Sequence record: KU686213.1
Direction: 5' to 3' (one strand)
DNA: 64,000 bases
Notes under the pieces: model-generated
What the model saw: only the letters and a program-made list of their open reading frames with translations
The model's database searches: none
Told to the model about the DNA's origin: nothing
Made by a program: the position numbers and the translations under genes
Shown: piece after piece, positions 1 through 12,600 of the stretch
How positions within the stretch are numbered: the first letter of the stretch is position 1
Layout: the number at the start of each line of letters is the position of its first letter

Positions 1-5
1 CTCAA

Positions 6-320
6 ATGCGCAAGATTGAAATCCAAATGAACCGCGCTGTTCAGTCTGGCACCAATTTCAGCCAAGCTAACACCTCAGTTCATCATCACGAGGGCGTAGC
101 AATTGTCCGCCTACACGGTAGCAAGATCGCTGAGGTAGGCGACGATTTCATCACTCTCTTCGATGGTGGCTTCCAATCCAATACTACCAAGAGCCGCCTC
201 AATGCCTTGATGGCTGAGTTCTGCTCACCCGGTGAGAACGTATTCCAGAAAGCTTACCAGTGGTTCATTCGCGCTAACGGCGTCACCATCCCATTTGAGT
301 CAGGTGTGACACTCCGCTAA
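6..320 (+). CDS. Hypothetical early protein (104 aa) of a type common in cyanophage hypervariable regions
   Basis: Clean ORF; its start context CTCAAATG is identical to the end of the cassette before ORF 1040, suggesting another cassette just upstream of the window. Confidence 0.75.
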   Translation: MRKIEIQMNRAVQSGTNFSQANTSVHHHEGVAIVRLHGSKIAEVGDDFITLFDGGFQSNTTKSRLNALMAEFCSPGENVFQKAYQWFIRANGVTIPFESGVTLR

Positions 321-321
321 A

Positions 322-387
322 CTGGCACACGCTCCCTAGCGGGAGCTCCCCCAGCTGCTACAATTGATTCATACCAAAGGAACCACA
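322..387 (+). promoter_or_regulatory. Early cassette copy 1: TGGCAC box, hairpin GCTCCC-TAGC-GGGAGC, -10 TACAAT (359-364), leader ATTCATACCAAA, RBS
   Basis: Shares GCTGCTACAATTGATTCATACCAAA with copies 2 and 3. Confidence 0.8.
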
Positions 388-957
388 ATGAACACCTTTC
401 TGACCTCCTCATTCCAAAACGTTCGCTCTTCAAAGCGTACTGACGAACTCCACACCGTCTTGCTAGCTGAGGTACTGGAAGCTAACCCCCAGTGGGCAGG
501 CTACGACTGGCAGTTCGAATACCGCCTTCCCGTTGACGGCTTCGGTGGAACCTTTGATATTGATATCGCCGGTTTCGTCAACGGTGAGCTGAAGGTGGCT
601 GTCCTGGCTAAGGCAATGAACTCAAACGTCAATAAGAATATCAAAAACTACGCTAACACCACCATTGGCGAAGCTGCCCGTCTGACCTATGCCCCTGGCT
701 TAGACCTCGAGGCTGTGCTCTTCGTTTCAGTCCTTCCCCGCACTGCCCCCCGCTTCAATAAGGCAGGCGAGGTTGTGGGACTTGACAACGTGCTAAGCGC
801 TAAGGCTCGCACCAACATCGGCAATATCATCGAAGCTCAGTACGGTGGGCTGGTTCAGGTCATCGACCTATTCTTCGATATCGACAATATCTCAGAGATG
901 CTGACCTCTGCCGACTTTCAAACTATCACCGTATCGAACGTCGATAAGGTGAGCTAA
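388..957 (+). CDS. Putative PD-(D/E)XK / restriction-endonuclease-like protein (189 aa from ATG 388)
   Basis: ORF; acidic/lysine pattern E..L..D.FGG.FDIDI...AK; ATG 388 follows the cassette RBS (track start 364 lies inside the promoter). Confidence 0.5.
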   Translation: MNTFLTSSFQNVRSSKRTDELHTVLLAEVLEANPQWAGYDWQFEYRLPVDGFGGTFDIDIAGFVNGELKVAVLAKAMNSNVNKNIKNYANTTIGEAARLTYAPGLDLEAVLFVSVLPRTAPRFNKAGEVVGLDNVLSAKARTNIGNIIEAQYGGLVQVIDLFFDIDNISEMLTSADFQTITVSNVDKVS

Positions 958-1039
958 GCCAATTGAGCCACTGGCACAAGGGAGCGGCACAGCTCCCCCC
1001 AGCTGCTACAATTGATTCATACCAAACAAAGGAACTCAA
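958..1039 (+). promoter_or_regulatory. Early cassette copy 2: GCCA-N10-TGGC palindrome, hairpin GGGAGC-GGCACA-GCTCCC, -10 TACAAT (1007-1012), leader, RBS
   Basis: Direct repeat of copies 1 and 3. Confidence 0.8.
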
Positions 1040-1318
1040 ATGAAAATCTCACTCGATCAGCAAGTCGCTCAACTCGCAGCCGAAGGTCATCAAGAGATTG
1101 CAGTCATCAAACTCCCTAGTCAGGCAACCCGCAAGCGTCGCAAGCCTAGCAAGCGTCGCACTACCTCTACGAATGCGGTCAGCCAAACTGCCTACACTCA
1201 AACCGAGAGCCGCAACCTAGGCAAGATCAATTCAGCCTATGCGCGTCAGCATAGTGCCGATAGGAGGGCAGCAGCTCAACAGCGAGCAGCCGAGCTTAAA
1301 GGTCAGCCAATCTTCTAA
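1040..1318 (+). CDS. Hypothetical basic (Arg/Lys-rich) early protein, 92 aa
   Basis: ORF with RBS AAAGGA from the cassette; RKRRKPSKRR stretch. Confidence 0.75.
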   Translation: MKISLDQQVAQLAAEGHQEIAVIKLPSQATRKRRKPSKRRTTSTNAVSQTAYTQTESRNLGKINSAYARQHSADRRAAAQQRAAELKGQPIF

Positions 1319-1388
1319 GAGGCACAAGGGGGCTAGGCAAGCCCCCACCAGCTGCTACAATTGATTCATACCAAACAAGGAACCCACA
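1306..1388 (+). promoter_or_regulatory. Early cassette copy 3: hairpin GGGGGCT-AGGCA-AGCCCCC, -10 TACAAT (1356-1361), leader, RBS
   Basis: Direct repeat of copies 1 and 2. Confidence 0.8.
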
Positions 1389-1835
1389 ATGGCTACTCTC
1401 AACTATTCACCCGCTCAGCAGACTCAACTCATTGAGTTCTATCAGCAATGGCTGCCTAGAGTCAATGCCTTCGGATACGACAATCTCCCCGACGGTTATC
1501 ACACATACTACCGCCACGGCAAGAAGCTGGCTAAGGCAGCAGCAGCCGCTAAGATAGTCGAAGCTAAAGCAGCGCGTCGTCGTGGCAATCCATACCTCCG
1601 TCCCGAAGTTGAATTTATTGTGCATAGCTACGTTCGGACCGATAGTCCTTCTATCGTTGCCGACGAATTTAAGGCAGCTTTTATCGACTCTCCCCATAGT
1701 CGCGAGAGCGTCCGCTCTTGTGCTGGGCAGCTTCGCTCATTAGACAACCTCTGCCCCGACGATACGGGCTGGACTGTAAAAAGCCTAGTCGCAGAAGTAG
1801 CTAGCGAATTATACCCCGAGCGCTTCGCCGCATGA
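1389..1835 (+). CDS. Hypothetical early protein, 148 aa
   Basis: ORF directly after the cassette RBS. Confidence 0.75.
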   Translation: MATLNYSPAQQTQLIEFYQQWLPRVNAFGYDNLPDGYHTYYRHGKKLAKAAAAAKIVEAKAARRRGNPYLRPEVEFIVHSYVRTDSPSIVADEFKAAFIDSPHSRESVRSCAGQLRSLDNLCPDDTGWTVKSLVAEVASELYPERFAA

Positions 1836-1841
1836 TTCTAT

Positions 1842-1906
1842 CAAGGGGCTAGCCACCTAGCCCCGATCTATGGTACAATTCATTCATACCAAACCAGGAA
1901 CCGACA
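1842..1906 (+). promoter_or_regulatory. Early cassette copy 4: perfect hairpin GGGGCTAG-CCAC-CTAGCCCC, -10 TACAAT (1874-1879), leader, RBS
   Basis: TATGGTACAATTCATTCATACCAAAC-CAGGAACC matches the other copies. Confidence 0.8.
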
Positions 1907-2125
1907 ATGCCTTTCTCACCTGCCTGCCGCCTTTCAGACCAGACCCGTGTATGGGTTGAGCGCTCAATCTATGAAGGGTGCGATTGGCAAATCGAAAAGC
2001 ACTTTGGACCAGCACAAGGGCAAGACGCCCAGACCATTGCCGCTCGCTTCGCTGCTACGTATTCAGAGGAGGGCAAGACGATGAGCCTAGCTAACCCCTG
2101 CAGCGGAATCAGAGCCGAAGATTGA
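1907..2125 (+). CDS. Hypothetical early protein, 72 aa
   Basis: ORF between cassette copies 4 and 5. Confidence 0.7.
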   Translation: MPFSPACRLSDQTRVWVERSIYEGCDWQIEKHFGPAQGQDAQTIAARFAATYSEEGKTMSLANPCSGIRAED

Positions 2126-2195
2126 CCAGCCAAGGGGGTTGACGGATCAGCCCCCTCTATGGTCTACAATTCTTACATACCAAACAAGGGAACCG
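2123..2195 (+). promoter_or_regulatory. Early cassette copy 5: hairpin GGGGGTTGA-CGGA-TCAGCCCCC containing -35 TTGACG (2139-2144), -10 TACAAT (2165-2170), leader, RBS AAGGGA
   Basis: Near-identical to copies 6 and 7. Confidence 0.85.
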
Positions 2196-2339
2196 ATGAA
2201 CGCCAAAATCTACATAGCATCGATGACCATTGGCTTCACGCTCTCCACCCTAGCCATTGTATTTGGGGCTATGTCCTTGGACTTCCAAGAGCCTTCGGCA
2301 GCAACCCCAGTTGCTCAAATCACCTGCCAAGGGGGTTGA
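2196..2339 (+). CDS. Small early membrane protein, 47 aa
   Basis: ATG 2196 after the RBS; hydrophobic N-terminal helix IYIASMTIGFTLSTLAIVFGAM; stop TGA lies inside the TTGAC of the next cassette. Confidence 0.65.
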   Translation: MNAKIYIASMTIGFTLSTLAIVFGAMSLDFQEPSAATPVAQITCQGG

Positions 2340-2390
2340 CGGATCAGCCCTCTATGGTCTACAATTCATTCATACCAAACAAGGGAACCG
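2325..2390 (+). promoter_or_regulatory. Early cassette copy 6: -35 TTGACG (2336-2341), -10 TACAAT (2360-2365), leader, RBS
   Basis: Near-identical to copies 5 and 7. Confidence 0.85.
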
Positions 2391-2597
2391 ATGACGACTC
2401 TTCACTCTATCGAAAATCTCACAGCCGAGCTCGACCGCCTAGAGGGAATCAAGAATCGCCTAGCAGGGCTGATCGTAGACCTTAAGCTCACCAACCCAGA
2501 CTCACTATTCATCGGACTCTATCAGGACCGCCTCAAGTTCAATGTTCTCCCCGCCATCAAACTCACCAAGGGCTACATTCTCAAGACCAGCAACTGA
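2391..2597 (+). CDS. Hypothetical early protein, 68 aa
   Basis: ORF between cassette copies 6 and 7. Confidence 0.7.
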   Translation: MTTLHSIENLTAELDRLEGIKNRLAGLIVDLKLTNPDSLFIGLYQDRLKFNVLPAIKLTKGYILKTSN

Positions 2598-3270: not shown

Positions 3271-3278
3271 ATCACACA

Positions 3279-3302
3279 GCCTCCCGCAAGGGGGGCTTTT
3301 TT
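3279..3302 (+). terminator. Rho-independent terminator closing the early array
   Basis: GCCTCCC-GCAA-GGGGGGC followed by T6. Confidence 0.85.
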
Positions 3303-3565
3303 AATGCGTGCGTATCGACAGTACTCGTTCGTGATAGGACAGTGCTATCCATTCGTGCGTTGAGGACAGTGGTATGGCGTTGCGATCCATTGGGGGGTGG
3401 CGGCGTTACCTTCGTATATAAAAAGTACCTTCTATCTAAGCTATAAAAGTAAAGATCGACCTATACTTATCGCTATTTAAAAAATTCTCCCAGATATTCT
3501 ATGGACCACAGAGTTGGCTCAGAGTTGTCTCTATATTATACCACACTTCTTAAATATCCCCCCAT

Positions 3566-3600
3566 AAAAAAATCCCCCAGGTATTCAATGCCCCTAGGAG
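3566..3600 (-). terminator. Minus-strand intrinsic terminator
   Basis: On the minus strand CUCCUAGG/CCUGGGGG 8-bp stem (G-U pairs), 11-nt loop, then A-U7. Confidence 0.55.
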
Positions 3601-3708
3601 ATGATTATTATTAACTTGATAACATTCGCTTATCTCTGTGTAATCCCTCTACACAGAAGTATTGCGTATATCTTCAATAAGTACTTAAAGTGTCTTATCA
3701 ACCTCAAC
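3566..3708 (-). ncRNA. Candidate ~140-nt structured sRNA or primer RNA
   Basis: Bounded by a consensus sigma70 promoter and a terminator; stems TCTGTGTA/TACACAGA (3635-3657) and TTGATAA/TTATCAA (3616-3622/3695-3701); no convincing ORF. Confidence 0.45.
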
Positions 3709-3714
3709 AAGGCT
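3678..3714. repeat. 37-bp block, copy A (copy B at 51441-51477, 1 mismatch)
   Basis: TAAGTACTTAAAGTGTCTTATCAACCTC(A/G)ACAAGGCT read directly at both loci. Confidence 0.95.
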
Positions 3715-3743
3715 ATTCTACAAGTATCTCCGTGTGTTGTCAA
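3715..3743 (-). promoter_or_regulatory. Minus-strand sigma70 promoter TTGACA-N17-TAGAAT
   Basis: TGTCAA at 3738-3743, ATTCTA at 3715-3720, 17-nt spacer. Confidence 0.8.
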
Positions 3744-3870
3744 GCCCCCATCAAGAGTATCCCTTTAAGTATCTCAACCATCCCCTGACAAACTGCACAA
3801 GGCTATTTAGAGAGTCATAAAAGAAGTATTTTCATTGAGATGCCGTAGGCACACACCGTAGGTGTGTTAG

Positions 3871-3930
3871 TAGAGATACTTAAAGAACCATAGAGAATCT
3901 TAGAGAAACATAGAGGACCGCAGAGAGCGC
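3871..3930 (+). repeat. Six in-phase decamers, consensus TAGAGAANC(A/T)
   Basis: TAGAGATACT TAAAGAACCA TAGAGAATCT TAGAGAAACA TAGAGGACCG CAGAGAGCGC, exact 10-bp period. Confidence 0.8.
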
Positions 3931-4069
3931 GAAAAATCCCCCTCTCAAGTTATCTCCGAAGAGAGTATTACAGAGAGGGTTATACTATTACTAAGGAATA
4001 CCCATATACTCTACAACTCACTCCGAAGGGTATAGAAGAGCTTAGTGGTCAGGGGGGAAATATGCTGTG

Positions 4070-4077
4070 TATAAATA
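4070..4077 (+). promoter_or_regulatory. T4-type late promoter TATAAATA with no protein gene behind it
   Basis: Exact gp55 consensus. Confidence 0.65.
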
Positions 4078-4081
4078 GAAG

Positions 4082-4232
4082 TGGAATACAAGCCTAGGAG
4101 CGTCTCTAATAGGCTCTCATCCTACGGGGGATAGAGACACTCCGAGTTCCATTGAGGCTCCCCACAAAGGCATTTAGAGTACGTAGAAGAACATATAGTA
4201 ACGTAGAGGTCCATAGAGGTCCTCTTTTTTTA
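4082..4232 (+). ncRNA. Candidate late structured sRNA
   Basis: Late promoter upstream; stem GGAG-C-GTCTCTA/TAGAGAC-A-CTCC (4097-4143); terminator-like GAGGTCC/GGTCCTC plus T7 at 4205-4232. Confidence 0.35.
4175..4223 (+). repeat. Second phased TAGAG array (5 units, 9-10 bp period)
   Basis: TAGAGTACG TAGAAGAACA TATAGTAACG TAGAGGTCCA TAGAGGTCCT. Confidence 0.65.
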
Positions 4233-4283
4233 TGGGCGAACCCTTTTTATGACCCTAGGGGGCAAGCCCCCACAATGAGGACC

Positions 4284-4314
4284 CATAAATACCAATAGAG
4301 AATATTAACTTATT
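4284..4314 (+). promoter_or_regulatory. Late promoter plus leader, repeated before each of the three paralogs (also 5029-5059 and 5783-5813)
   Basis: (C/T)ATAAATAC(C/T)AATAGA(G/A)AATA(T/C)TAACTTATTATG in all three. Confidence 0.85.
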
Positions 4315-5028
4315 ATGGCAGTTAACATAAGCGGTAATGGAGCTATTGAGGGTATTACTTCTTTTAATGGGGAGGATATTGCTTCTTTTAATGAGGGAGG
4401 TCCTACTTTCCGCAATATACTCTTTAATGGTTGGGTGAACACCAGTATTGGAATAAACCAACGTGGCAAAACAATAGCTCAAGTTTCTAATGGGGAATAT
4501 TGGGCTGATAGGTGGCAACGTGTTTCATCCACAACTATGACCCAGAAGGTTGAAGGGGGTAACTATATACCAAATAGGACATATACGTTATCTGGTAATA
4601 ATGTAACAACAACACAAATCACATCCCCTGCTAGTGGAACTTGGGATTGGGGTACTGTGCCCTCCAATGCGTCATTGGTTCAGTTGGAGCTAGGTGATAC
4701 TGCATCTTCTTTTGAATATAGACCCTATGGGTTGGAAGTAATTTTGTGTCAGAGGTATTATGAAGTTGTTGATTGTGAATATGGTACAACCGCAGTACTT
4801 GATGCGGGGAATTCGAATAAAGCTATAAAAAAACCTTGGATATATAAAGTTAGTAAAAGAATTATACCAACCGCTATTGTAACTGCTCAAAGTGGTGCTT
4901 ATTCTACCAATGCTAGTGTGAGTGGAATACGAAGTTCTTTTTGCAATCTCAATTGGCAATGGCAACAGACATCTGGAAATTTTGATAGGACCAAGGCTGC
5001 TGTAGTTAACGTCGATGCCGAACTATAA
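4315..5028 (+). CDS. Putative virion or fibre-tip protein, paralog 1 (237 aa)
   Basis: FRN..NG..INQRG..Y.ADRW and QLE.G..AS.FE.R...LCQRYY motifs of a type common in cyanophage fibre-associated proteins; late promoter. Confidence 0.75.
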   Translation: MAVNISGNGAIEGITSFNGEDIASFNEGGPTFRNILFNGWVNTSIGINQRGKTIAQVSNGEYWADRWQRVSSTTMTQKVEGGNYIPNRTYTLSGNNVTTTQITSPASGTWDWGTVPSNASLVQLELGDTASSFEYRPYGLEVILCQRYYEVVDCEYGTTAVLDAGNSNKAIKKPWIYKVSKRIIPTAIVTAQSGAYSTNASVSGIRSSFCNLNWQWQQTSGNFDRTKAAVVNVDAEL

Positions 5029-5059
5029 TATAAATACTAATAGAAAATATTAACTTATT

Positions 5060-5782
5060 ATGGCAGTTAACATAAGCGGTAATGGAGCTATTGAGGGTAT
5101 TACTTCTTTTAATGGGGGCGGACTTACCTTTCGTAATATACTCTATAATGGGTGGGTAAACACCAGTAATGAAATAAACCAACGTGGCAAAACAATATCC
5201 GAGGTTTCTGATGGAGACTATTGGGCTGATAGGTGGCAACGTGTTTCCTCTACGACAATGACCCAAAAAGTTGAAGAGGGTAACTATATACCAAATAGGA
5301 CATATACGTTATCTGGTAATAATGTAACAACAGTGCAGGTAACATCACCTGCCAGTGGAACTTGGAATTGGGGAACTGTTCCCTCCAATGCTTCATTGGT
5401 TCAGTTAGAGTTGGGTGATACTCCATCTGCTTTTGAATATAGACCCAAGGGGTTAGAGTTGGGTTTGTGTCAGAGGTACTATCAAAATCTCAATGTTAGA
5501 ATGTTGTTAGATCAGGTGAATTATTTATTTTCTTCTCGCAATTCTTATGTTAATCCAATGCGAACTGCACCATCAGTAGGTTTTACAGGTAAGTTAAAGT
5601 GGGATGATTTAATTACCGGGCAGTTAAGTTCTTCTGGATTTGATTCGGATAATGTTAATGTTTCATCTAAGGTGATTCGGGCAACACAATTTTACGTTTA
5701 TGTTGCGTTGTCGGGGGTTCAGCCGAATGTCTTTAAAAGGTATCAATTTGAAGAGGCTATTAGCCTTGATGCCGAACTATAA
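5060..5782 (+). CDS. Putative virion or fibre-tip protein, paralog 2 (240 aa)
   Basis: Same N-terminal ~140 aa as paralog 1, divergent C-terminus, ends DAEL. Confidence 0.75.
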   Translation: MAVNISGNGAIEGITSFNGGGLTFRNILYNGWVNTSNEINQRGKTISEVSDGDYWADRWQRVSSTTMTQKVEEGNYIPNRTYTLSGNNVTTVQVTSPASGTWNWGTVPSNASLVQLELGDTPSAFEYRPKGLELGLCQRYYQNLNVRMLLDQVNYLFSSRNSYVNPMRTAPSVGFTGKLKWDDLITGQLSSSGFDSDNVNVSSKVIRATQFYVYVALSGVQPNVFKRYQFEEAISLDAEL

Positions 5783-5813
5783 TATAAATACCAATAGAGA
5801 ATACTAACTTATT

Positions 5814-6488
5814 ATGTCAGTTAACATAAGCGGTAATGGAGCTATTGAGGGTATTACTTCCTTTAATGGAGGAGGGCTTACTTTCCGCAATATTCTTTAT
5901 AATGGTTGGGTGAACACCAGTAGTGAAATCAACCAACGTGGCAAAACAATAGCTCAAGTTTCTAATGGAAACTATTTTGCAGATCGATGGGAAAGAGTTT
6001 CATCCACAACTATGACCCAAAAAGTTGAAGAAAAAAATTATATACCAAATAGGACATATACGATATCGGGTACTAACGTAACAACAGTGCAGGTAACATC
6101 ACCTGCTAGTGGGACTTGGGATTGGGGAACTGTGCCGTCTGATGCTTCATTGGTTCAGTTAGAGTTGGGTGATACTGCATCTTCTTTTGAATATAGACCC
6201 TATGGATTGGAGTTGAGTTTGTGTCAGAGGTACTATCAGTTTGCATATGCTAATATTAGAGGTAGGGGTGGGGGTATTTCTGAAAATGCAGTAACCTGGA
6301 ATACTCAAATGAGAATAGCTCCAACAATATTGCGCATTGCGGCAGCTTCAGGTGGAGGTCTCAATAATATAATTCGATATCTTGATATAGCTCCCTATGG
6401 GTGTCGTATGGAAGCAACAAACACCCAACCTGGCGGTACGGAGAGTTATGCACTTGCGCAAATCTTGGAACTAAATGCTGAACTATGA
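5814..6488 (+). CDS. Putative virion or fibre-tip protein, paralog 3 (224 aa)
   Basis: Same N-terminal ~140 aa, divergent C-terminus, ends NAEL. Confidence 0.75.
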   Translation: MSVNISGNGAIEGITSFNGGGLTFRNILYNGWVNTSSEINQRGKTIAQVSNGNYFADRWERVSSTTMTQKVEEKNYIPNRTYTISGTNVTTVQVTSPASGTWDWGTVPSDASLVQLELGDTASSFEYRPYGLELSLCQRYYQFAYANIRGRGGGISENAVTWNTQMRIAPTILRIAAASGGGLNNIIRYLDIAPYGCRMEATNTQPGGTESYALAQILELNAEL

Positions 6489-6574
6489 TTGGATTTATTG
6501 TAATACTATTATTCTTTCTTGGGATTATGGGTCTTATGACCTTCCTTTCCGTTTTTGGTGATTGGTTTGTATAG
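6485..6574 (+). CDS. Small membrane peptide, 29 aa (MIGFIVILLFFLGIMGLMTFLSVFGDWFV)
   Basis: ATGA overlap with the stop of paralog 3; entirely hydrophobic; below the ORF-track cutoff. Confidence 0.5.
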   Translation: MIGFIVILLFFLGIMGLMTFLSVFGDWFV

Positions 6575-9624: not shown

Positions 9625-12600
9625 ATGATTGGTACTGGTATTGATGTGAGAGTGAAGATTCAAGATATTGTTTCTTCACAACTTCCCGAATTTATTTTAA
9701 GTGAAGCGCCATTAACTGATGACTTCTTAAAACAGTTTTATGTCTCCCAGGAATTTCAGGGAGGGGCAATTGATTTTGCTACAAATTTAGACCAGTACCT
9801 AGACCTAAACAACCTAAGTTCAGATTCTCTCTACGGCACATTTGAACTAACCCAAGATATATCATCCACAGATACTGAAGTATTTGTAAATACAACAAAA
9901 AGTTTCCCTGGCGAGTGGGGGCTCTTAAAGGTCAATGATGAAATCATGACCTATACTGGTATTACAACCAATTCTTTCACTGGCGTTGTAAGGGGCTTCA
10001 GTGGAGTAACTTCACTTCATGCTGAAGGTGCTCCCGAAGAGATTGTATTTAACGCCACAGAGGCTTCTAGCCACCTCTCAGGTGCTTCTGTAACAAACCT
10101 AAGCACATTATTCTTAAAGGAATTTTATAAAAAGCTCTCATACACATTTGCTCCTGGTTTTGAGGACCTAGATGTTGACTCTGAACTTGATGTAGGTAAC
10201 TGGATTCGACAGGTTCGTTCATTCTTCCAAACAAAGGGAAGTGAGGAGTCAATCATTATCCTCTTCAAAGTTTTATATGGAGAGAAGCCAACTGTTATTG
10301 ACTTGGAAGATTTCCTAATCAAGCCATCAACCGCAGAGTACTCTAGGAGAGATTATGCGGTAGCTATTCCTGTTGAAGGAAATCCAATTGACCTCAAAGG
10401 TAAAACTATTTTTCAAGTAGGCAGCCCCAATGTATTTGGTGCTGTTTCTGAGATTGAAGCATTTACTCGTGATGGGAGATTGTATTATAGGATTTATTTC
10501 TTCGTATCTAATGAAGAGGTATTGAATGAAAGAAAGCTATTCACAATTCCTGGAAGAACTCAATGCCAGAGGGAATGGAATCCTGGTGATACAACGCTCA
10601 CCGTAGATACTACTATTGGCTTCCGCGATAATGGTGAGTTCATAACAGCGGACGGCATTGTATTCAATTACGAACAGAGGAGTGTTAATCAATTCCTAGG
10701 TGTTACTTGTTCTGTTCCAACAAAGAAAGTTCTAATTACTGATGAGATCATTGACAATATAATTGTCTCTGGTATGAATGATCTTGGGGAAGAAGTTACT
10801 TTGCGCCTAACTGGAGTTATTTCTGATATTAATTTTGGTGATGATATTCCATTTAATTTCCAAGGTGAGAAAATTCGTGTAGATACTCTAGGTGAAAGTA
10901 TTTTAAGTAATATCGCTACCAGAGACGAATCAACCGTACCAGAAATTATTGCTAATAGCTTTGTATATAATACAAGTGTTAGATTTGAAGTGGAAAGTGT
11001 TAATGGTACTTCATTCATTTTATCAGCACCTTACTTAGACAAATCATCTATTGATGTTGGAGATACTGTTGATATCCTTCCACGTGGTGGTCAGAATGCT
11101 TATATCATAGGTGCTCCAGTTACCGAAGTTGATTTTGTTAACTCTACCGTTACAATTAATAACTCATTCGGTATTCCAGTTAACCAGTCACTGGATATTA
11201 GGAGAAATCAAAAATATGCTAATAGTAGTGGAGCTAGAATTGACTATGGTAACAATGCCGTACTATCAAATGTTTTGAACTTATATGATGGTAGAGAGTA
11301 TGATTCAAATTACTACGTAGCAACTAATTCACTACCATCCTATGAAATCTCTGCCAATATTGTAGAGAGTTCATTAGTTAGTCCAACACAACAGAGCTTT
11401 GATGATTTTAATAGTTTCACTGGTGAGTATTCAACTATTATCTTTGCGGGTGATGTTAATTTTTATACCGGGGATTTAGTTACTTATTCCGTAAGTGAAG
11501 GAGCAACTTCATTAACTGAAACTGGGGAATATTATGTTCAAGTTCTATCTGATAGAAGAAAGGTTAAGCTTTTTGTTTCTCCATCATTTATTGGAAGTGA
11601 GAATTCAGTTGGACTTGTATATACTCCAGACTCAGGCTCACATTTCTTTACTCTAGAAAGTCAGAAGACACGTGAAATTTCAACTAAGCGTATTTTTAGA
11701 AAAATTCCTGTATCTGATAGTTTAGTTGCTATTGATAGAACTCCTGAAGAAACTACTCCTGGTTCTATCGCAGTATTGACTAATGGTGTGGAGATTGTTT
11801 CATATAAGTCTCCAAATAAAGTATACCTGGGTCCACTTGAGAGATTAGATGTTGGATCACGTGGTGAAGGATATAGTGTAATATCTCCACCCAAAATCTA
11901 CATTGCCGAACCTGATGTTCAGCTATATGAAGGTGGTACTGGTAGTGTAGTTCCTACTAAAGCTACAAGTACTCCAGTAATTAAAGGTGAGTTAGAGGAA
12001 ATTCTAATTGACCCACAGGACTTTGATATTAAAGAAGTATTCAGTATCACCGTCAGGGGTGGTAATAGCCGTGGTGCATCAGCTGTTCCTATTATTGATA
12101 AAAAGAATAGGGAACTACCTTTTGATAGTAGAGTTACTACATTGGGTGGCGGTGTTAATCCTGATGATAACAGCATCCTTTTTCAGAGCAATCATAATTT
12201 AACAGAAGGAACTGCATTAGTTTATAATAACAAGGGTGCTGATAGTATTGGTATTACCCTTTCAGATAATACTGATTTTAGTACAGGTGCAACTCTTTCT
12301 AATGGTGGAGTTTATTATGCTAAAATATTAAACAATAGAACTATTCAATTATTCGAGACTTTAGAGTCTTTGAATAATGGTGGAGATCCAGTATTTCTAT
12401 CATCAAATCTAACTGGGTATGGTTTTCAGTCATTTGATACATTAAGGGCTGATAGATTGATTGGAGCAACAATCACTGATGATGGTGGAGACTTTTTCTA
12501 TAGAAATATGTCCTTCAATCCATCAAATGTATTTGATGAGTATGATGAAATCAGATACGTATCCCACGGATTTAATAGTGGGGATATTGTAGAGTATGGG

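What the first reader, a model, noticed from the sequence alone, without database searches (positions are those of the whole stretch)
4284..6488. Triplicated late-gene units with constant ends and a swapped C-terminal domain: candidate receptor-tip variation cassette
Seen: three ~0.7-0.75 kb units, each with its own late promoter and near-identical 31-nt leader. About 140 N-terminal residues are near-identical up to LCQRYY, then an ~80-100 aa region differs almost completely (only a KR..PT / MRTAPS / MRIAPT motif is shared), then the sequence returns to a conserved (D/N)AEL-stop. In units 1 and 2 the conserved tail GATGCCGAACTATAA runs straight into the next TATAAATA. The variable segment therefore has homology arms on both sides. 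Unit 1 also carries a degenerate 24-nt tandem duplication (4348-4395). Inference: independently expressed alternative binding tips on a common scaffold, exchangeable by homologous recombination, giving mixed-specificity virions or host-range switching without an invertase or RT.
Basis: partly seen in the sequence, partly recalled or inferred. Interest (0 to 1): 0.7.

Follow-up and report, generated by a model that had tools for sequence, protein, structure and literature searches.

The report
Three tandem phage receptor-tip genes
A marine cyanobacterial virus (Synechococcus phage S-CAM7) carries three side-by-side late genes for small, free-standing tail-fibre tip or spike proteins with a shared body and a different lectin-like end domain each; this is an ordinary kind of phage host-recognition module, and relatives show its end domain and gene number changing by recombination.

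Summary
The window is Synechococcus phage S-CAM7, and the units are gp121-123 (237, 240 and 224 aa).

- **Layout.** Each unit follows a NATAAATA late-promoter motif and a near-identical leader. The first ~141-149 residues are 83-88% identical. The last 83-99 residues are about 20% identical, and each protein ends in (D/N)AEL.
- **Family.** This module is the extreme C-terminal part of thousands of phage tail-fibre proteins.
- **Solved relative.** A family profile also hits the vertex spike GP13 of vibriophage NO16 (PDB 9T9R). GP13 is a trimer with a 20-residue N-terminal anchoring stalk and two beta-sandwiches joined by a short helix. AlphaFold models of the units agree with that layout.
- **Variable domain.** It weakly resembles H-type lectins and the C-terminal domains of tailspikes and R-pyocin fibres.
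- **Exchange in relatives.** The end domain is replaced exactly between CQRYY and xAEL. Locus copy number is 1, 2 or 3.
- **Between S-CAM7 isolates.** The end domains of units 2 and 3 are the divergence hot spot of 47 kb.
- **Not a switch.** The paralog cores are old (dS about 0.45), so this is evolutionary modular exchange, not programmed switching.
- **Untested.** Virion presence, the docking partner and the receptors.

It is a new member of a known kind.

The parts
4258..4271 (+). GC hairpin (GGGGG-CAAG-CCCCC) 12 nt upstream of the unit 1 promoter motif. The stem is kept and the loop differs in relatives.
   Evidence: Read. The same position in L005, L006, L009, L093, L103, L105 and L106 has the stem with other loops. 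Function unknown.
4284..4291 (+). Late-promoter-like motif of unit 1 (CATAAATA, fits NATAAATA)
   Evidence: Cyanomyovirus late motif NATAAATA per PMC2984593. A gp55-type late sigma factor is annotated in the window. Expression not tested.
4292..4314 (+). Leader of unit 1. It is near-identical in the three units: 1-2 differences between unit 1 and the other two, 3 between units 2 and 3.
   Evidence: the 33-nt pattern occurs 3 times, 0 expected.
4315..5028 (+). Unit 1 CDS (S-CAM7 gp121, 237 aa): N-terminal stalk-like segment, constant core, linker helix, variable C-domain type 1
   Evidence: PHROG 4492, E 5.9e-47. Identical in isolate 0809CC03.
4348..4400 (+). 24-nt tandem duplication (2.2 copies). 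It adds 8 residues to the stalk-like N-terminal segment of unit 1.
4762..5025 (+). Variable C-domain of unit 1 (aa 150-237), after CQRYY and ending DAEL
   Evidence: The same type occurs in P0011 (41% over 81 aa) and P0015 (34% over 83 aa) on more distant cores.
5029..5036 (+). TATAAATA late-promoter motif of unit 2, directly after the stop of unit 1
5060..5782 (+). Unit 2 CDS (gp122, 240 aa)
   Evidence: PHROG 4492, E 1.1e-52.
5483..5779 (+). Variable C-domain of unit 2 (aa 142-240): six-strand sandwich with an insertion after strand 3
   Evidence: AlphaFold model m76eb0d248a86, pLDDT 75. Foldseek hits to tailspike ends, the C-terminal parts of R-pyocin fibres and H-type lectins. 54% identical to the P0010 C-domain, whose core is only 57-59% identical. 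Isolate differences pN/pS 1.6.
5783..5790 (+). TATAAATA late-promoter motif of unit 3, directly after the stop of unit 2
5814..6488 (+). Unit 3 CDS (gp123, 224 aa)
   Evidence: AlphaFold model m4e1b577ae957: pLDDT 88.5, pTM 0.82.
6237..6485 (+). Variable C-domain of unit 3 (aa 142-224). It is the strongest divergence hot spot between S-CAM7 isolates in 47 kb.
   Evidence: 8.8% differences in bin 6001-6500 against about 0.4% background. pN/pS 1.9. Changes fall in three clusters around alternate loops.

Best explanation
gp121, gp122 and gp123 of S-CAM7 are three paralogous, separately promoted late genes for free-standing receptor-binding tips (spikes) of the adsorption apparatus.

Each protein is predicted to have four parts:
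- a ~20-residue N-terminal segment that, by analogy with the solved homologue NO16 GP13, forms a trimeric stalk plugged into a virion partner;
- a conserved beta-sandwich core (in GP13 a carbohydrate-binding module with a cleft);
- a short helix (…LCQRYY);
- a ~85-100-residue six-stranded, lectin-like C-terminal sandwich that differs completely in sequence between the three genes.

The stalk and core are shared, so the three proteins probably dock on the same kind of site and give the virion up to three different binding surfaces, most likely for cell-surface glycans.

Over evolutionary time the C-domain is replaced by homologous recombination. The crossovers use the conserved core on the 5' side, and the xAEL codons plus flanking DNA (or the next unit) on the 3' side. 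The number of units changes by unequal crossing-over in the identical 5' stretch.

What is shown:
- sequence anatomy and family membership;
- predicted fold;
- domain replacement and copy-number differences in relatives;
- the hot spot between isolates.

What is inferred:
- late expression and trimer formation;
- virion location and docking partner;
- glycan binding and different specificities.
For: **Identity.** The window is 100% identical to S-CAM7. RefSeq calls the three genes 'tail fiber protein'.

**Family.**
- All three match the C-terminal third of PHROG 4492, tail fiber (E 1e-47 to 1e-53).
- HMMER finds 5446 cluster representatives at E<=1e-3, 200-1135 aa long, with the module at the C-terminal end.
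- Every one of 157 complete modules lies within 10 residues of the C-terminus, and 134 end in AEL.
- Foldseek against BFVD gives 77 hits at E<=1e-3. The named ones among the top 50 listed are mostly tail-fibre or tail proteins of phages with contractile, long and short tails.

**Solved homologue.**
- The family profile hits PDB 9T9R chain H, 'Spike (GP13)', 235 aa, E 2.7e-8. The match covers the NxxINxxxxINQ...DxWK core and the C(K/Q)R(F/Y) helix with the M(H/R)xxP motif.
- In the NO16 paper, GP13 was found in virions by mass spectrometry and is trimeric.
- It is anchored by residues 3-20 and built of two beta-sandwiches linked by a small helix. A CBM16-like cleft sits in the N-terminal sandwich (bioRxiv 10.1101/2025.11.28.690173).

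**Models.**
- Unit 3 model: pLDDT 88.5; low confidence for residues 1-20; a strand-rich core; helix 130-138; then six strands.
- Unit 2 C-domain model: same topology.
- Both models retrieve the same weak PDB set: AP22 gp54, phi297 gp61 and LKA1 gp49 tailspikes, R1/R2 pyocin fibres, and the lectins SLL-2 and Helix agglutinin.

**Selection.**
- Paralog cores: dN/dS 0.15, so all three are kept under purifying selection.
- Between isolates, the C-domains of units 2 and 3 carry 58 differing positions in 546 nt against a 0.4% background (p about 1e-61).
- Those changes are about 39 non-synonymous to 6 synonymous. This differs from the regime in the cores (Fisher p 3e-6).
- In unit 3, 23 of 24 changed positions fall in three clusters around alternate loops.

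**Exchange.**
- L010 and L094 come from the same sample and are 97% identical in DNA. Their similarity is lost from just after CQRY(Y/F) to 25 nt before the stop.
- L103 has both S-CAM7 flanks but a single unit with a fourth C-type.
- Among 174 protein pairs with cores at least 80% identical, 107 have C-domains at most 25% identical. The reverse also occurs (core 42%, C-domain 86%). Overall r = 0.11.
- The unit 2 C-domain is 54% identical to that of P0010, whose core is only 57-59% identical.

**Copy number.**
- One unit in L006-L009, L103 and L105.
- A tandem pair in L104.
- 2-4 paralogs in 10 of 79 IMG/VR loci.
- L005 equals isolate 0809CC03 (99.97% over 6.7 kb) minus units 1-2. Its junction lies inside the 43-nt stretch that is identical in units 1 and 3.

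**Context.** Host resistance to S-CAM7 maps to galE, a gene of LPS synthesis (bioRxiv 10.64898/2026.10.08.757702). That agrees with sugar-binding tips but does not link to these genes.
Against: - **No direct evidence for S-CAM7.** There are no data that any of the three proteins is in the virion, and no transcript data. The promoter is a motif match only, and TATAAATA is not strongly over-represented in the window (12 found, 6.5 expected).
- **Weak link to GP13.** It holds only at profile level; single-sequence searches find nothing in the PDB.
- **Weak fold matches.** Foldseek PDB matches for the C-domain have E 0.004-0.1 and TM 0.42-0.55 normalised to the length of the small lectin targets.
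- **No shared sequence between C-domain types.** The three types cannot be shown homologous by sequence profiles beyond the MRxxPT motif (hhalign probability 3-38%). 'Same fold' therefore rests on two AlphaFold models, one of them of moderate confidence.
- **pN/pS not significant.** pN/pS above 1 is not significant on its own (p 0.14).
- **The sugar site may lie elsewhere.** In GP13 the proposed sugar cleft is in the conserved N-terminal sandwich, so the variable domain need not be the specificity determinant.
- **L005 may be an artefact.** It could be an assembly collapse, since Logan contigs use short k-mers.
- **Docking partner unknown.**
Confidence: 0.7

Rival explanations
1. The three proteins are virion tips, but the conserved N-terminal sandwich does the binding, as proposed for the CBM cleft of NO16 GP13. 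The variable C-domain is then only a trimer cap under weak constraint, and the paralogs are largely redundant rather than alternative specificities.
For: - The NO16 paper places the carbohydrate-binding cleft in the N-terminal sandwich.
- The core has many nearly invariant polar and aromatic residues across 139 sequences (N, Q, R, Y, D, R, W).
- pN/pS above 1 in the C-domains is not significant by itself.
Against: - A mere cap would not be expected to be replaced wholesale again and again between near-identical cores (107 of 174 close pairs).
- Nor would it be the top divergence hot spot of 47 kb, with changes clustered around alternate loops.
- Three intact copies are kept, with cores at dN/dS 0.15 and dS about 0.45. 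That argues for retention of different functions.
- The nearest solved folds for the C-domain are lectins and fibre or spike ends.
Confidence: 0.15
2. The array is a programmed variation system. Frequent recombination among the units, or with a silent partial copy, reshuffles C-domains or unit number within a lysate, giving rapid switching of host recognition.
For: - Identical 43-72-nt stretches sit at the 5' ends of the units.
- L005 looks like isolate 0809CC03 after loss of units 1-2 by crossover in that stretch.
- A coevolution study reports many deletions in S-CAM7 lines.
- L093 has a 124-aa ORF made of a short N-terminal piece plus a C-domain only.
Against: - The cores of the three units are equally and substantially diverged (dS 0.42-0.47), so there is no ongoing homogenisation.
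- The four S-CAM7 records all have the same three units in the same order, three of them with 100% identical DNA across the array.
- No recombinase, invertase or reverse transcriptase is annotated near the array or in the parts of the genome I read.
- Substitutions between isolates are not adenine-specific.
- L005 may be an assembly artefact.
Confidence: 0.08
3. The proteins are not virion components. They could be assembly factors for other fibres, or soluble glycan-binding proteins acting in the infected cell or after lysis.
For: - There is no proteomic evidence for S-CAM7.
- The proteins are short and lack a fibre shaft.
- They lie at the edge of the hyperplastic region rather than inside the core baseplate block.
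Against: - The module is the C-terminal end of fibre proteins in thousands of phages.
- Its one solved free-standing homologue is a virion spike.
- The genes sit directly upstream of gp25 and gp6, on the same strand, behind late-promoter motifs.
- There is no match to known fibre-assembly chaperone families in Pfam, NCBIfam or PHROGs.
Confidence: 0.05

Closest known systems
Vertex spike GP13 of the non-tailed vibriophage NO16 (PDB 9T9R; bioRxiv 10.1101/2025.11.28.690173)
   Same: - Free-standing protein of the same size (235 aa).
- Profile-level homology in both halves (E 2.7e-8).
- Same order of parts: a ~20-residue N-terminal anchoring segment, a beta-sandwich, a short helix, a second beta-sandwich. 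The AlphaFold model of unit 3 agrees.
- Virion protein thought to bind host carbohydrates.
   Different: - NO16 is a membrane-containing, double-jelly-roll virus of another realm, with one such gene docked on a penton. S-CAM7 is a T4-like tailed phage with three tandem paralogs and an unknown partner.
- Single-sequence similarity is undetectable.
- The NO16 authors place the binding cleft in the N-terminal sandwich, whereas the S-CAM7 variation is in the C-terminal one.
Long tail-fibre proteins carrying the same module at their C-terminus, e.g. Synechococcus phage ACG-2014f tail fiber (771 aa) and PHROG 4492
   Same: Core 49% identical over residues 23-141. Foldseek E 1.5e-16. Same CQRYY…xAEL end.
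   Different: - There the module is fused to a ~530-residue shaft, with one gene per locus.
- The first 131 residues of the ACG-2014f fibre are instead homologous to the N-terminus of a different S-CAM7 protein, gp217 (52%). The parts are therefore distributed differently.
Receptor-binding proteins of lactococcal siphophages (p2, TP901-1 and bIL170 types) with exchangeable head domains (own knowledge, not tested here)
   Same: A conserved N-terminal attachment part, a linker, and a C-terminal binding domain that is swapped between otherwise close phages at a conserved border.
   Different: Unrelated sequence and fold as far as the searches show: no such hit in Pfam, the PDB or Foldseek. One gene per phage, not a tandem set.
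gp38-type adhesins of T2, T6 and S16-like phages (own knowledge; no hit obtained)
   Same: A small separate protein at the tip of the adsorption organelle. It has a conserved N-terminal attachment part and a variable C-terminal part whose loops set specificity.
   Different: - No homology was detected in any search.
- gp38 caps the long fibre gp37, which cyanomyoviruses lack.
- gp38 is a single gene.
Multi-tailspike phages (ViI/CBA120-like, K1-5/SP6-like) and C-terminal lectin-like domains of tailspikes and R-type pyocin fibres
   Same: - Several receptor-binding proteins are expressed together with a related attachment part.
- The nearest solved folds for the variable domain come from phi297 gp61, LKA1 gp49, AP22 gp54 and R1/R2 pyocin fibres. 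That the match is to their C-terminal domains is my inference; the tool gives no target coordinates.
   Different: - Those proteins are large enzymes or fibres of about 600-700 residues or more (R1/R2 pyocin fibre 691-701).
- The similarity here is to one small domain, at weak scores.
- Simultaneous display is not shown for S-CAM7.
Invertible tail-fibre segments (Mu G, P1 C) and diversity-generating retroelements (Bordetella phage BPP-1) (own knowledge)
   Same: A constant N-terminal fibre part is combined with alternative or variable C-terminal binding parts.
   Different: - Those use a site-specific invertase with inverted repeats, or a reverse transcriptase with adenine-specific mutagenesis.
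- Here all units are direct repeats on one strand, each with its own copy of the constant part.
- No invertase or RT is annotated, and the substitutions are not adenine-specific.

Membership tests
GP13-like spike / tail-fibre C-terminal tip module (PHROG 4492 C-terminal part; PDB 9T9R chain H) | Sequence homology to the family | tested here: met
   PHROG 4492, E 5.9e-47, 1.1e-52 and 7.5e-47, on profile positions 752/776-1096 of 1096. 5446 HMMER representatives. A3 profile against 9T9R_H, E 2.7e-8.
GP13-like spike / tail-fibre C-terminal tip module | Order of parts: short N-terminal stalk, beta-sandwich, short helix, second beta-sandwich | tested here: met
   AlphaFold model of unit 3: residues 1-20 at pLDDT 51-58, core strands 59-118, helix 130-138, six strands 141-221. 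This is compared with the written description of GP13. It is a prediction and was not superposed on 9T9R.
GP13-like spike / tail-fibre C-terminal tip module | Module at the extreme C-terminus, ending in xAEL | tested here: met
   157 of 157 complete modules lie within 10 residues of the end, and 134 end in AEL. The units end in DAEL, DAEL and NAEL.
GP13-like spike / tail-fibre C-terminal tip module | Trimer anchored in a virion partner; present in virions | not testable with these tools
   No multimer prediction and no proteome of S-CAM7 were available. Shown only for NO16 GP13.
H-type lectin fold / lectin-like C-terminal domain of tailspikes and R-pyocin fibres | Six-stranded antiparallel beta-sandwich of ~100 residues superposable on solved members | tested here: inconclusive
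   Two independent models (whole unit 3, and the C-domain of unit 2) retrieve the same set: 3wmp, 4q56, 2ccv, 4ru5, 4ru4, 4y9v, 6cxb, 6cl5. The scores are weak: E 0.004-0.1, TM 0.42-0.55 normalised to the length of the small lectin targets.
H-type lectin fold / lectin-like C-terminal domain of tailspikes and R-pyocin fibres | Sequence membership in the curated lectin family; sugar-binding residues | tested here: not met
   No Pfam or NCBIfam family at E<=1. Binding residues were not examined.
T4-type late gene (gp55-dependent) | NATAAATA motif at the -10 position shortly upstream of the start codon | tested here: met
   CATAAATA, TATAAATA and TATAAATA end 23 nt before each ATG. 11 of 12 TATAAATA in the window are on the coding strand. 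Motif definition from PMC2984593. Transcription itself was not tested.
gp38-type adhesin of T-even phages | Homology to gp38 | tested here: not met
   No gp38 family or structure appears in Pfam, PHROGs, NCBIfam, PDB sequence or Foldseek results.
Diversity-generating retroelement | Reverse transcriptase, a template repeat, adenine-specific changes in the variable repeat | tested here: not met
   No RT is annotated in NC_031927 at 1-50 kb or 58.5-216 kb. Isolate substitutions involve all bases.
Invertible tail-fibre segment (Gin/Cin type) | Invertase gene and alternative C-terminal exons in opposite orientation between inverted repeats | tested here: not met
   All three units are complete genes in direct orientation on the + strand. 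No invertase is annotated.

The most novel reading that the evidence does not exclude
The array may work as a receptor-tip 'accordion'. Unequal crossing-over in the 43-72-nt identical 5' stretches (leader plus stalk codons) would regularly produce one-, two- and three-unit genomes and chimeric units within S-CAM7 populations. Standing variation in the tip repertoire would then exist in every lysate and be sorted by host resistance. The L005 contig (isolate 0809CC03 minus units 1-2) would be one such product, and the many deletions reported in coevolved S-CAM7 lines would include this locus.
Probability: 0.2. Interest if true: 0.65.

Novelty: new member of a known kind. Interest (0 to 1): 0.42.

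Why it matters
**Candidate receptor-binding proteins.** Marine T4-like cyanophages lack recognisable homologues of the T4 fibre genes, and their receptor-binding proteins are largely unassigned. This locus gives three concrete candidates in S-CAM7, a phage used in host-resistance and pilus-binding studies.

**An uncurated module.** These proteins belong to a very large module family that is absent from Pfam and NCBIfam. One relative has now been solved.

**Natural markers of diversification.** The clean borders of the variable domain, the natural alleles and the 1-versus-3 copy-number differences are ready-made markers. They can be used to follow host-recognition diversification in cyanophage populations.

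**Shared across virus realms.** The same module serves tailed phages and a non-tailed double-jelly-roll phage. That is a small but clear case of host-recognition parts being shared across virus realms.

The underlying principle, modular and multiplied receptor-binding proteins, is well established, so the finding is useful rather than surprising.

Tried and rejected
- **Curated families.** Pfam and NCBIfam scans of the three proteins found nothing at E<=1.
- **PDB by sequence.** Single-sequence searches found nothing. Only the profile search found 9T9R.
- **IMG/VR.** The scan with the three-unit alignment gave no relatives. The wide alignment gave only distant ones, useful solely for counting paralog sets.
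- **JGI metagenome scans.** Both failed: the protein patterns gave nothing, and the leader DNA pattern gave one chance hit in a transposase gene.
- **RNA genes.** Rfam and tRNA scans of the window found nothing.
- **Diversity-generating retroelement and invertase models.** Rejected (see the membership tests).
- **Homology among C-domain types.** Profile-profile comparison aligned only 16-24 columns around MRxxPT, at probability 3-38%. Sequence homology among the types is not shown.
- **Neighbouring genes.**
  - PHROG scans of the 292-aa partner in L010, the 149-aa gene in L096 and the 124-aa ORF in L093 were uninformative.
  - The L010 partner has no similarity to the S-CAM7 gene at the equivalent place.
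- **Docking partner.** A short-peptide search for the stalk sequence in the S-CAM7 genome gave only a 6-residue chance match.
- **Origin of run SRR12470689.** It could not be traced in the literature.
- **Coevolution preprint.** Its supplementary tables, which would say which S-CAM7 fibre genes mutated, are not held.
- **Recent duplication with fast divergence.** Rejected as the sole explanation. The C-domain type of unit 2 also occurs on a core only 57-59% identical, while the cores within the array are 86-88% identical.


Full report
**1. What the window is.** The region is 100% identical to three records of Synechococcus phage S-CAM7, a T4-like cyanomyovirus (Kyanoviridae, Mazuvirus). It is 97.7% identical to a fourth isolate, 0809CC03 (MT586120). 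The three units are gp121-gp123. RefSeq calls them 'tail fiber protein'; GenBank calls them 'hypothetical protein'. They lie on the + strand at the downstream edge of a region of small unknown genes. They sit about 0.8 kb upstream of the baseplate genes gp25 and gp6 and a 4314-aa structural giant.

**2.
- **ORFs.** They lie at 4315-5028, 5060-5782 and 5814-6488 (237, 240 and 224 aa), with 31-nt spacers.
- **Shared and divergent parts.**
  - The first 141-149 residues, up to LCQRYY, are 83-88% identical.
  - The rest is about 20% identical and shares only (K/M)RxxP(T/S) and the last residues (D/N)AEL.
- **Promoter and leader.** A 33-nt promoter-core, leader and ATG pattern occurs three times against 0 expected.
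- **Promoter motifs.** Units 2 and 3 have TATAAATA directly after the preceding stop. Unit 1 has CATAAATA. That fits the cyanomyovirus late motif NATAAATA (PMC2984593). The late sigma factor is annotated in the window.
- **Duplication.** The 24-nt duplication in unit 1 is real. It adds eight residues near the N-terminus.
- **No terminator.** No convincing terminator separates the units: the only +-strand match inside the array is a weak one within the unit 3 coding sequence (5857-5875). Read-through transcription is as possible as separate starts.

**3. What the proteins are.**
- **No curated family.** Pfam and NCBIfam have no family for them.
- **PHROGs.** All three match the last third of PHROG 4492, tail fiber (E 1e-47 to 1e-53).
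- **Exhaustive HMMER search.**
  - It finds 5446 cluster representatives at E<=1e-3.
  - The proteins are 200-1135 residues long, with the match placed near the C-terminus.
  - In my sample, all 157 complete modules end within 10 residues of the C-terminus, and 134 end in AEL.
  - 61 are free-standing proteins of at most 280 residues, like the S-CAM7 genes.
- **Examples.**
  - The ACG-2014f fibre (771 aa) carries the module at residues ~530-771.
  - An N4-like vibriophage carries it in a 361-aa protein next to its tail protein.
- **Model of unit 3.**
  - The AlphaFold model is confident: pLDDT 88.5, pTM 0.82.
  - It shows a low-confidence first 20 residues, a strand-rich core, a helix at 130-138 (…LCQRYY) and a six-stranded sandwich at 141-221.
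- **Foldseek against predicted viral structures.** There are 77 hits at E<=1e-3; the named ones among the top 50 listed are mostly fibre or tail proteins of phages with contractile, long and short tails.

**4. A solved relative.**
- **The hit.**
  - A profile of 139 family members hits PDB 9T9R chain H, 'Spike (GP13)', 235 aa, at E 2.7e-8.
  - It aligns collinearly in the core and around the C(K/Q)R(F/Y) helix and M(H/R)xxP motif.
- **What 9T9R is.** It is the vertex of the non-tailed marine vibriophage NO16 (bioRxiv 10.1101/2025.11.28.690173).
- **What its authors report**.
  - GP13 is in virions by mass spectrometry and forms trimers.
  - Residues 3-20 of the three chains form a stalk that plugs into the penton.
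  - The body is two beta-sandwiches joined by a small helix.
  - The N-terminal sandwich has a CBM16-like cleft.
- **Agreement with S-CAM7.** This matches the predicted layout of the units part for part. It also gives a role to the N-terminal ~20 residues.
- **The stalk segment is the best-conserved stretch.**
  - With the leader, it is the most conserved DNA of the array.
  - There are 0-1 synonymous differences in the first 19 codons, where about 4-5 are expected from the rest of the core.
  - Identical stalks suggest that the three proteins use the same kind of docking site. This is inference.

**5. The variable domain.**
- **Model.** I modelled the unit 2 C-domain alone (residues 120-240). 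It is of moderate confidence (pLDDT 75). It shows the same helix plus six strands, with an insertion after strand 3.
- **PDB matches.**
  - Searched against the PDB, it returns the same set as the whole unit 3 model.
  - The set is the tailspikes AP22 gp54, phi297 gp61 and LKA1 gp49; R1/R2 pyocin fibres; and the H-type lectins SLL-2 and Helix agglutinin.
  - Scores are E 0.004-0.1, with TM 0.42-0.55 normalised to the length of the small lectin targets.
- **Reading.** The lectin-like resemblance belongs to the variable domain. Two sequence-unrelated types appear to share one fold, but the scores are weak.
- **Sequence profiles.** Profiles of the three types align only around MRxxPT.
- **Why the ends are constant.**
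  - In the model, MRxxPT begins strand 3 and xAEL ends strand 6.
  - In an up-and-down sandwich both lie at the end next to the core.
  - That would explain why they are constant while the rest varies. This is inference.

**6. Selection and variation.**
- **Paralog cores.** dS is 0.42-0.47, dN is 0.064-0.073 and dN/dS is 0.15 for all three pairs. The copies are old, about equally distant, all under purifying selection and not being homogenised.
- **Isolate comparison.**
  - Isolates 0910CC49 and 0809CC03 align collinearly over 47 kb at 99.4% identity.
  - Most 500-nt bins differ by 0-1%.
  - Bin 6001-6500 differs by 8.8%, the highest in the block, and bin 5501-6000 by 2.4%.
- **Where the differences fall.**
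  - They sit in the C-domains of units 2 and 3.
  - There are 58 differing positions in 546 nt, including one 12-nt indel (p about 1e-61).
  - Unit 1 and all three cores are essentially identical.
- **Kind of change.**
  - The changes are mostly non-synonymous: pN/pS is 1.6 for unit 2 and 1.9 for unit 3.
  - This is not significantly above 1 (p 0.14).
  - It is very different from the regime in the cores (p 3e-6).
- **Loop clusters in unit 3.**
  - 23 of 24 changed positions fall in three clusters: 150-156, 169-185 and 202-210.
  - These surround the strand 1-2, 3-4 and 5-6 loops of the model, which in such a sandwich lie at the same, distal end. This is inference.

**7. Exchange and copy number in relatives.**
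- **Replacement at fixed borders.**
  - Two contigs of another cyanomyovirus from one sample (L010, L094) are 97% identical in DNA.
  - Their similarity is lost from just after CQRY(Y/F) to 25 nt before the stop, then resumes at 95%.
  - The two proteins are 89% identical in the core and 24% in the C-domain.
- **A single-unit relative.**
  - L103 is a k141 contig.
  - It has the S-CAM7 upstream flank, one unit with a fourth C-type, and the S-CAM7 downstream flank at 95%.
  - Similarity resumes 14 nt before the stop.
- **Family-wide decoupling.**
  - Among 169 proteins, 174 pairs have cores at least 80% identical, and 107 of these have C-domains at most 25% identical.
  - The converse also exists (core 42%, C-domain 86%). 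Overall r is 0.11.
- **C-domain types on distant cores.**
  - The C-domain of unit 2 is 54% identical to that of P0010, whose core is only 57-59% identical to any unit.
  - Unit 1-type and unit 3-type domains likewise occur on more distant cores.
  - Simple duplication and divergence in place cannot produce this. It requires either import of C-domains or homogenisation of cores.
- **Copy number.**
  - One unit at the same locus in L006-L009 (several assemblies), L103 and L105.
  - A tandem pair in L104.
  - Three in all four S-CAM7 records.
  - 2-4 paralogs in 10 of 79 distant IMG/VR loci.
- **A possible deletion product.**
  - L005 is 99.97% identical to isolate 0809CC03 over 6.7 kb.
  - It joins the unit 1 promoter, leader and second codon to the body of unit 3.
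  - The junction lies inside the 43-nt stretch identical in those units.
  - This is either the product of unequal crossing-over or a short-k-mer assembly collapse.
- **A different locus.** In L010 and L094 the gene sits between a DUF6321 gene, a 292-aa gene and the terminase. The gene therefore also moves as a unit.

**8.
- **Borne out.**
  - The anatomy.
  - The 'binding tip' idea and the lectin-like guess.
- Exchange at conserved borders.
- **The 3' 'arm'.** The 15-nt 3' homology arm is a protein motif of the whole family. Real 3' homology is the flank or the next unit.
- **The constant part.** It may itself bind sugar.
- **No switch.** There is no sign of frequent switching. This looks like slow modular evolution plus occasional unit loss or gain.
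- **No invertase or RT.**
  - None is annotated in record positions 1-50 kb or 58.5-216 kb.
  - The 8.5 kb between them was not read.
- **Open.** Virion presence, partner, receptors and mixed virions.

**9. Context from the literature.**
- Resistance of Synechococcus WH7803 to S-CAM7 maps to galE, a gene of LPS synthesis. Evolved S-CAM7 lines carry mutations in fibre genes and many deletions (bioRxiv 10.64898/2026.10.08.757702). The tables naming the genes are not held.
- S-CAM7 also binds type IV pili more often than two other cyanomyoviruses (bioRxiv 10.1101/2025.09.20.677514).
- Neither paper links these traits to gp121-123.

**10. Novelty and score.**
- Multiplied receptor-binding proteins with exchangeable ends are well known in phages.
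- What is specific here:
  - a compact tandem triple of free-standing tips in a T4-like cyanophage;
  - its assignment to a huge uncurated module family with one solved member from a different virus realm;
  - natural evidence for border-exact domain replacement and copy-number change.
- I rate it a new member of a known kind, with interest 0.42.

All comparisons used the sequences as they stand.

Noticed in passing
window 6485-6574 (+): An unannotated 29-codon ORF encodes a strongly hydrophobic peptide. Its ATG overlaps the stop of unit 3 (ATGA). The peptide is conserved after the single unit in L103 and L105 and after the first unit in L093. Function unknown; it may be translationally coupled to the last tip gene.
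   Followed up: partly
window 3298-4284: About 1 kb has no sizeable ORF.
- It lies between a good intrinsic terminator (3278-3297) and the unit 1 promoter.
- It holds a TATAAATA at 4070-4077 with no gene behind it, and many TAGAG-type repeats, including a 10-nt tandem at 4204-4222.
- It also holds a T-run and the GC hairpin at 4258-4271.
- The CATAGAGG-type repeats and the hairpin recur upstream of the tip gene in L093, L103 and L105.
- There is no Rfam match.
   Followed up: partly
L093:1292-1666: A relative carries, after its full-length tip gene and the small hydrophobic ORF, a 124-aa ORF with its own ATAAATA-like motif. The ORF consists of a short N-terminal segment joined directly to a C-domain (PMRTSPT … LDAEL) and lacks the conserved core. 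It could be a remnant or a separately used domain.
   Followed up: partly
L101:6630-7046 (S-CAM7 gp217, outside the window) and L003:3399-5714: The first 131 residues of the ACG-2014f tail fibre are 52% identical to the N-terminus of S-CAM7 gp217 (1041 aa). gp217 lies just downstream of a collagen-repeat protein. The C-terminal module of the ACG-2014f fibre matches gp121-123. Fibre parts are therefore distributed differently between the two phages, and gp217 is one candidate partner for the tips.
   Followed up: partly
window 970-1044 and 1305-1386; L006 and L009, several sites: Two ~60-80-nt intergenic stretches in the window each match three or more intergenic sites of the related contigs at 80-84% identity. 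They look like a repeated regulatory element in the region of small genes upstream of the array.
   Followed up: no
PDB 9T9R chain H versus the family profile (A3): The same host-recognition module occurs in tailed phages (Caudoviricetes fibres) and in the vertex spike of a non-tailed double-jelly-roll vibriophage of another virus realm. The NO16 paper does not mention the link to tail fibres in the passages I read.
   Followed up: partly
window 1-2500 and 10001-10500: Between the two S-CAM7 isolates, the first 2.5 kb of the window (small unknown genes) differ by 3-11%, with gaps in the alignment. One bin inside the 4314-aa giant gene reaches 2.0% against a background of about 0.3%.
   Followed up: no
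L010:5084-6675, L094:1476-3052: In another cyanomyovirus lineage, the free-standing tip gene sits at a different place: after a DUF6321 gene and a 292-aa gene (PHROG 3552, unknown function), just before the large terminase. It has a different leader and no TATAAATA.
   Followed up: partly
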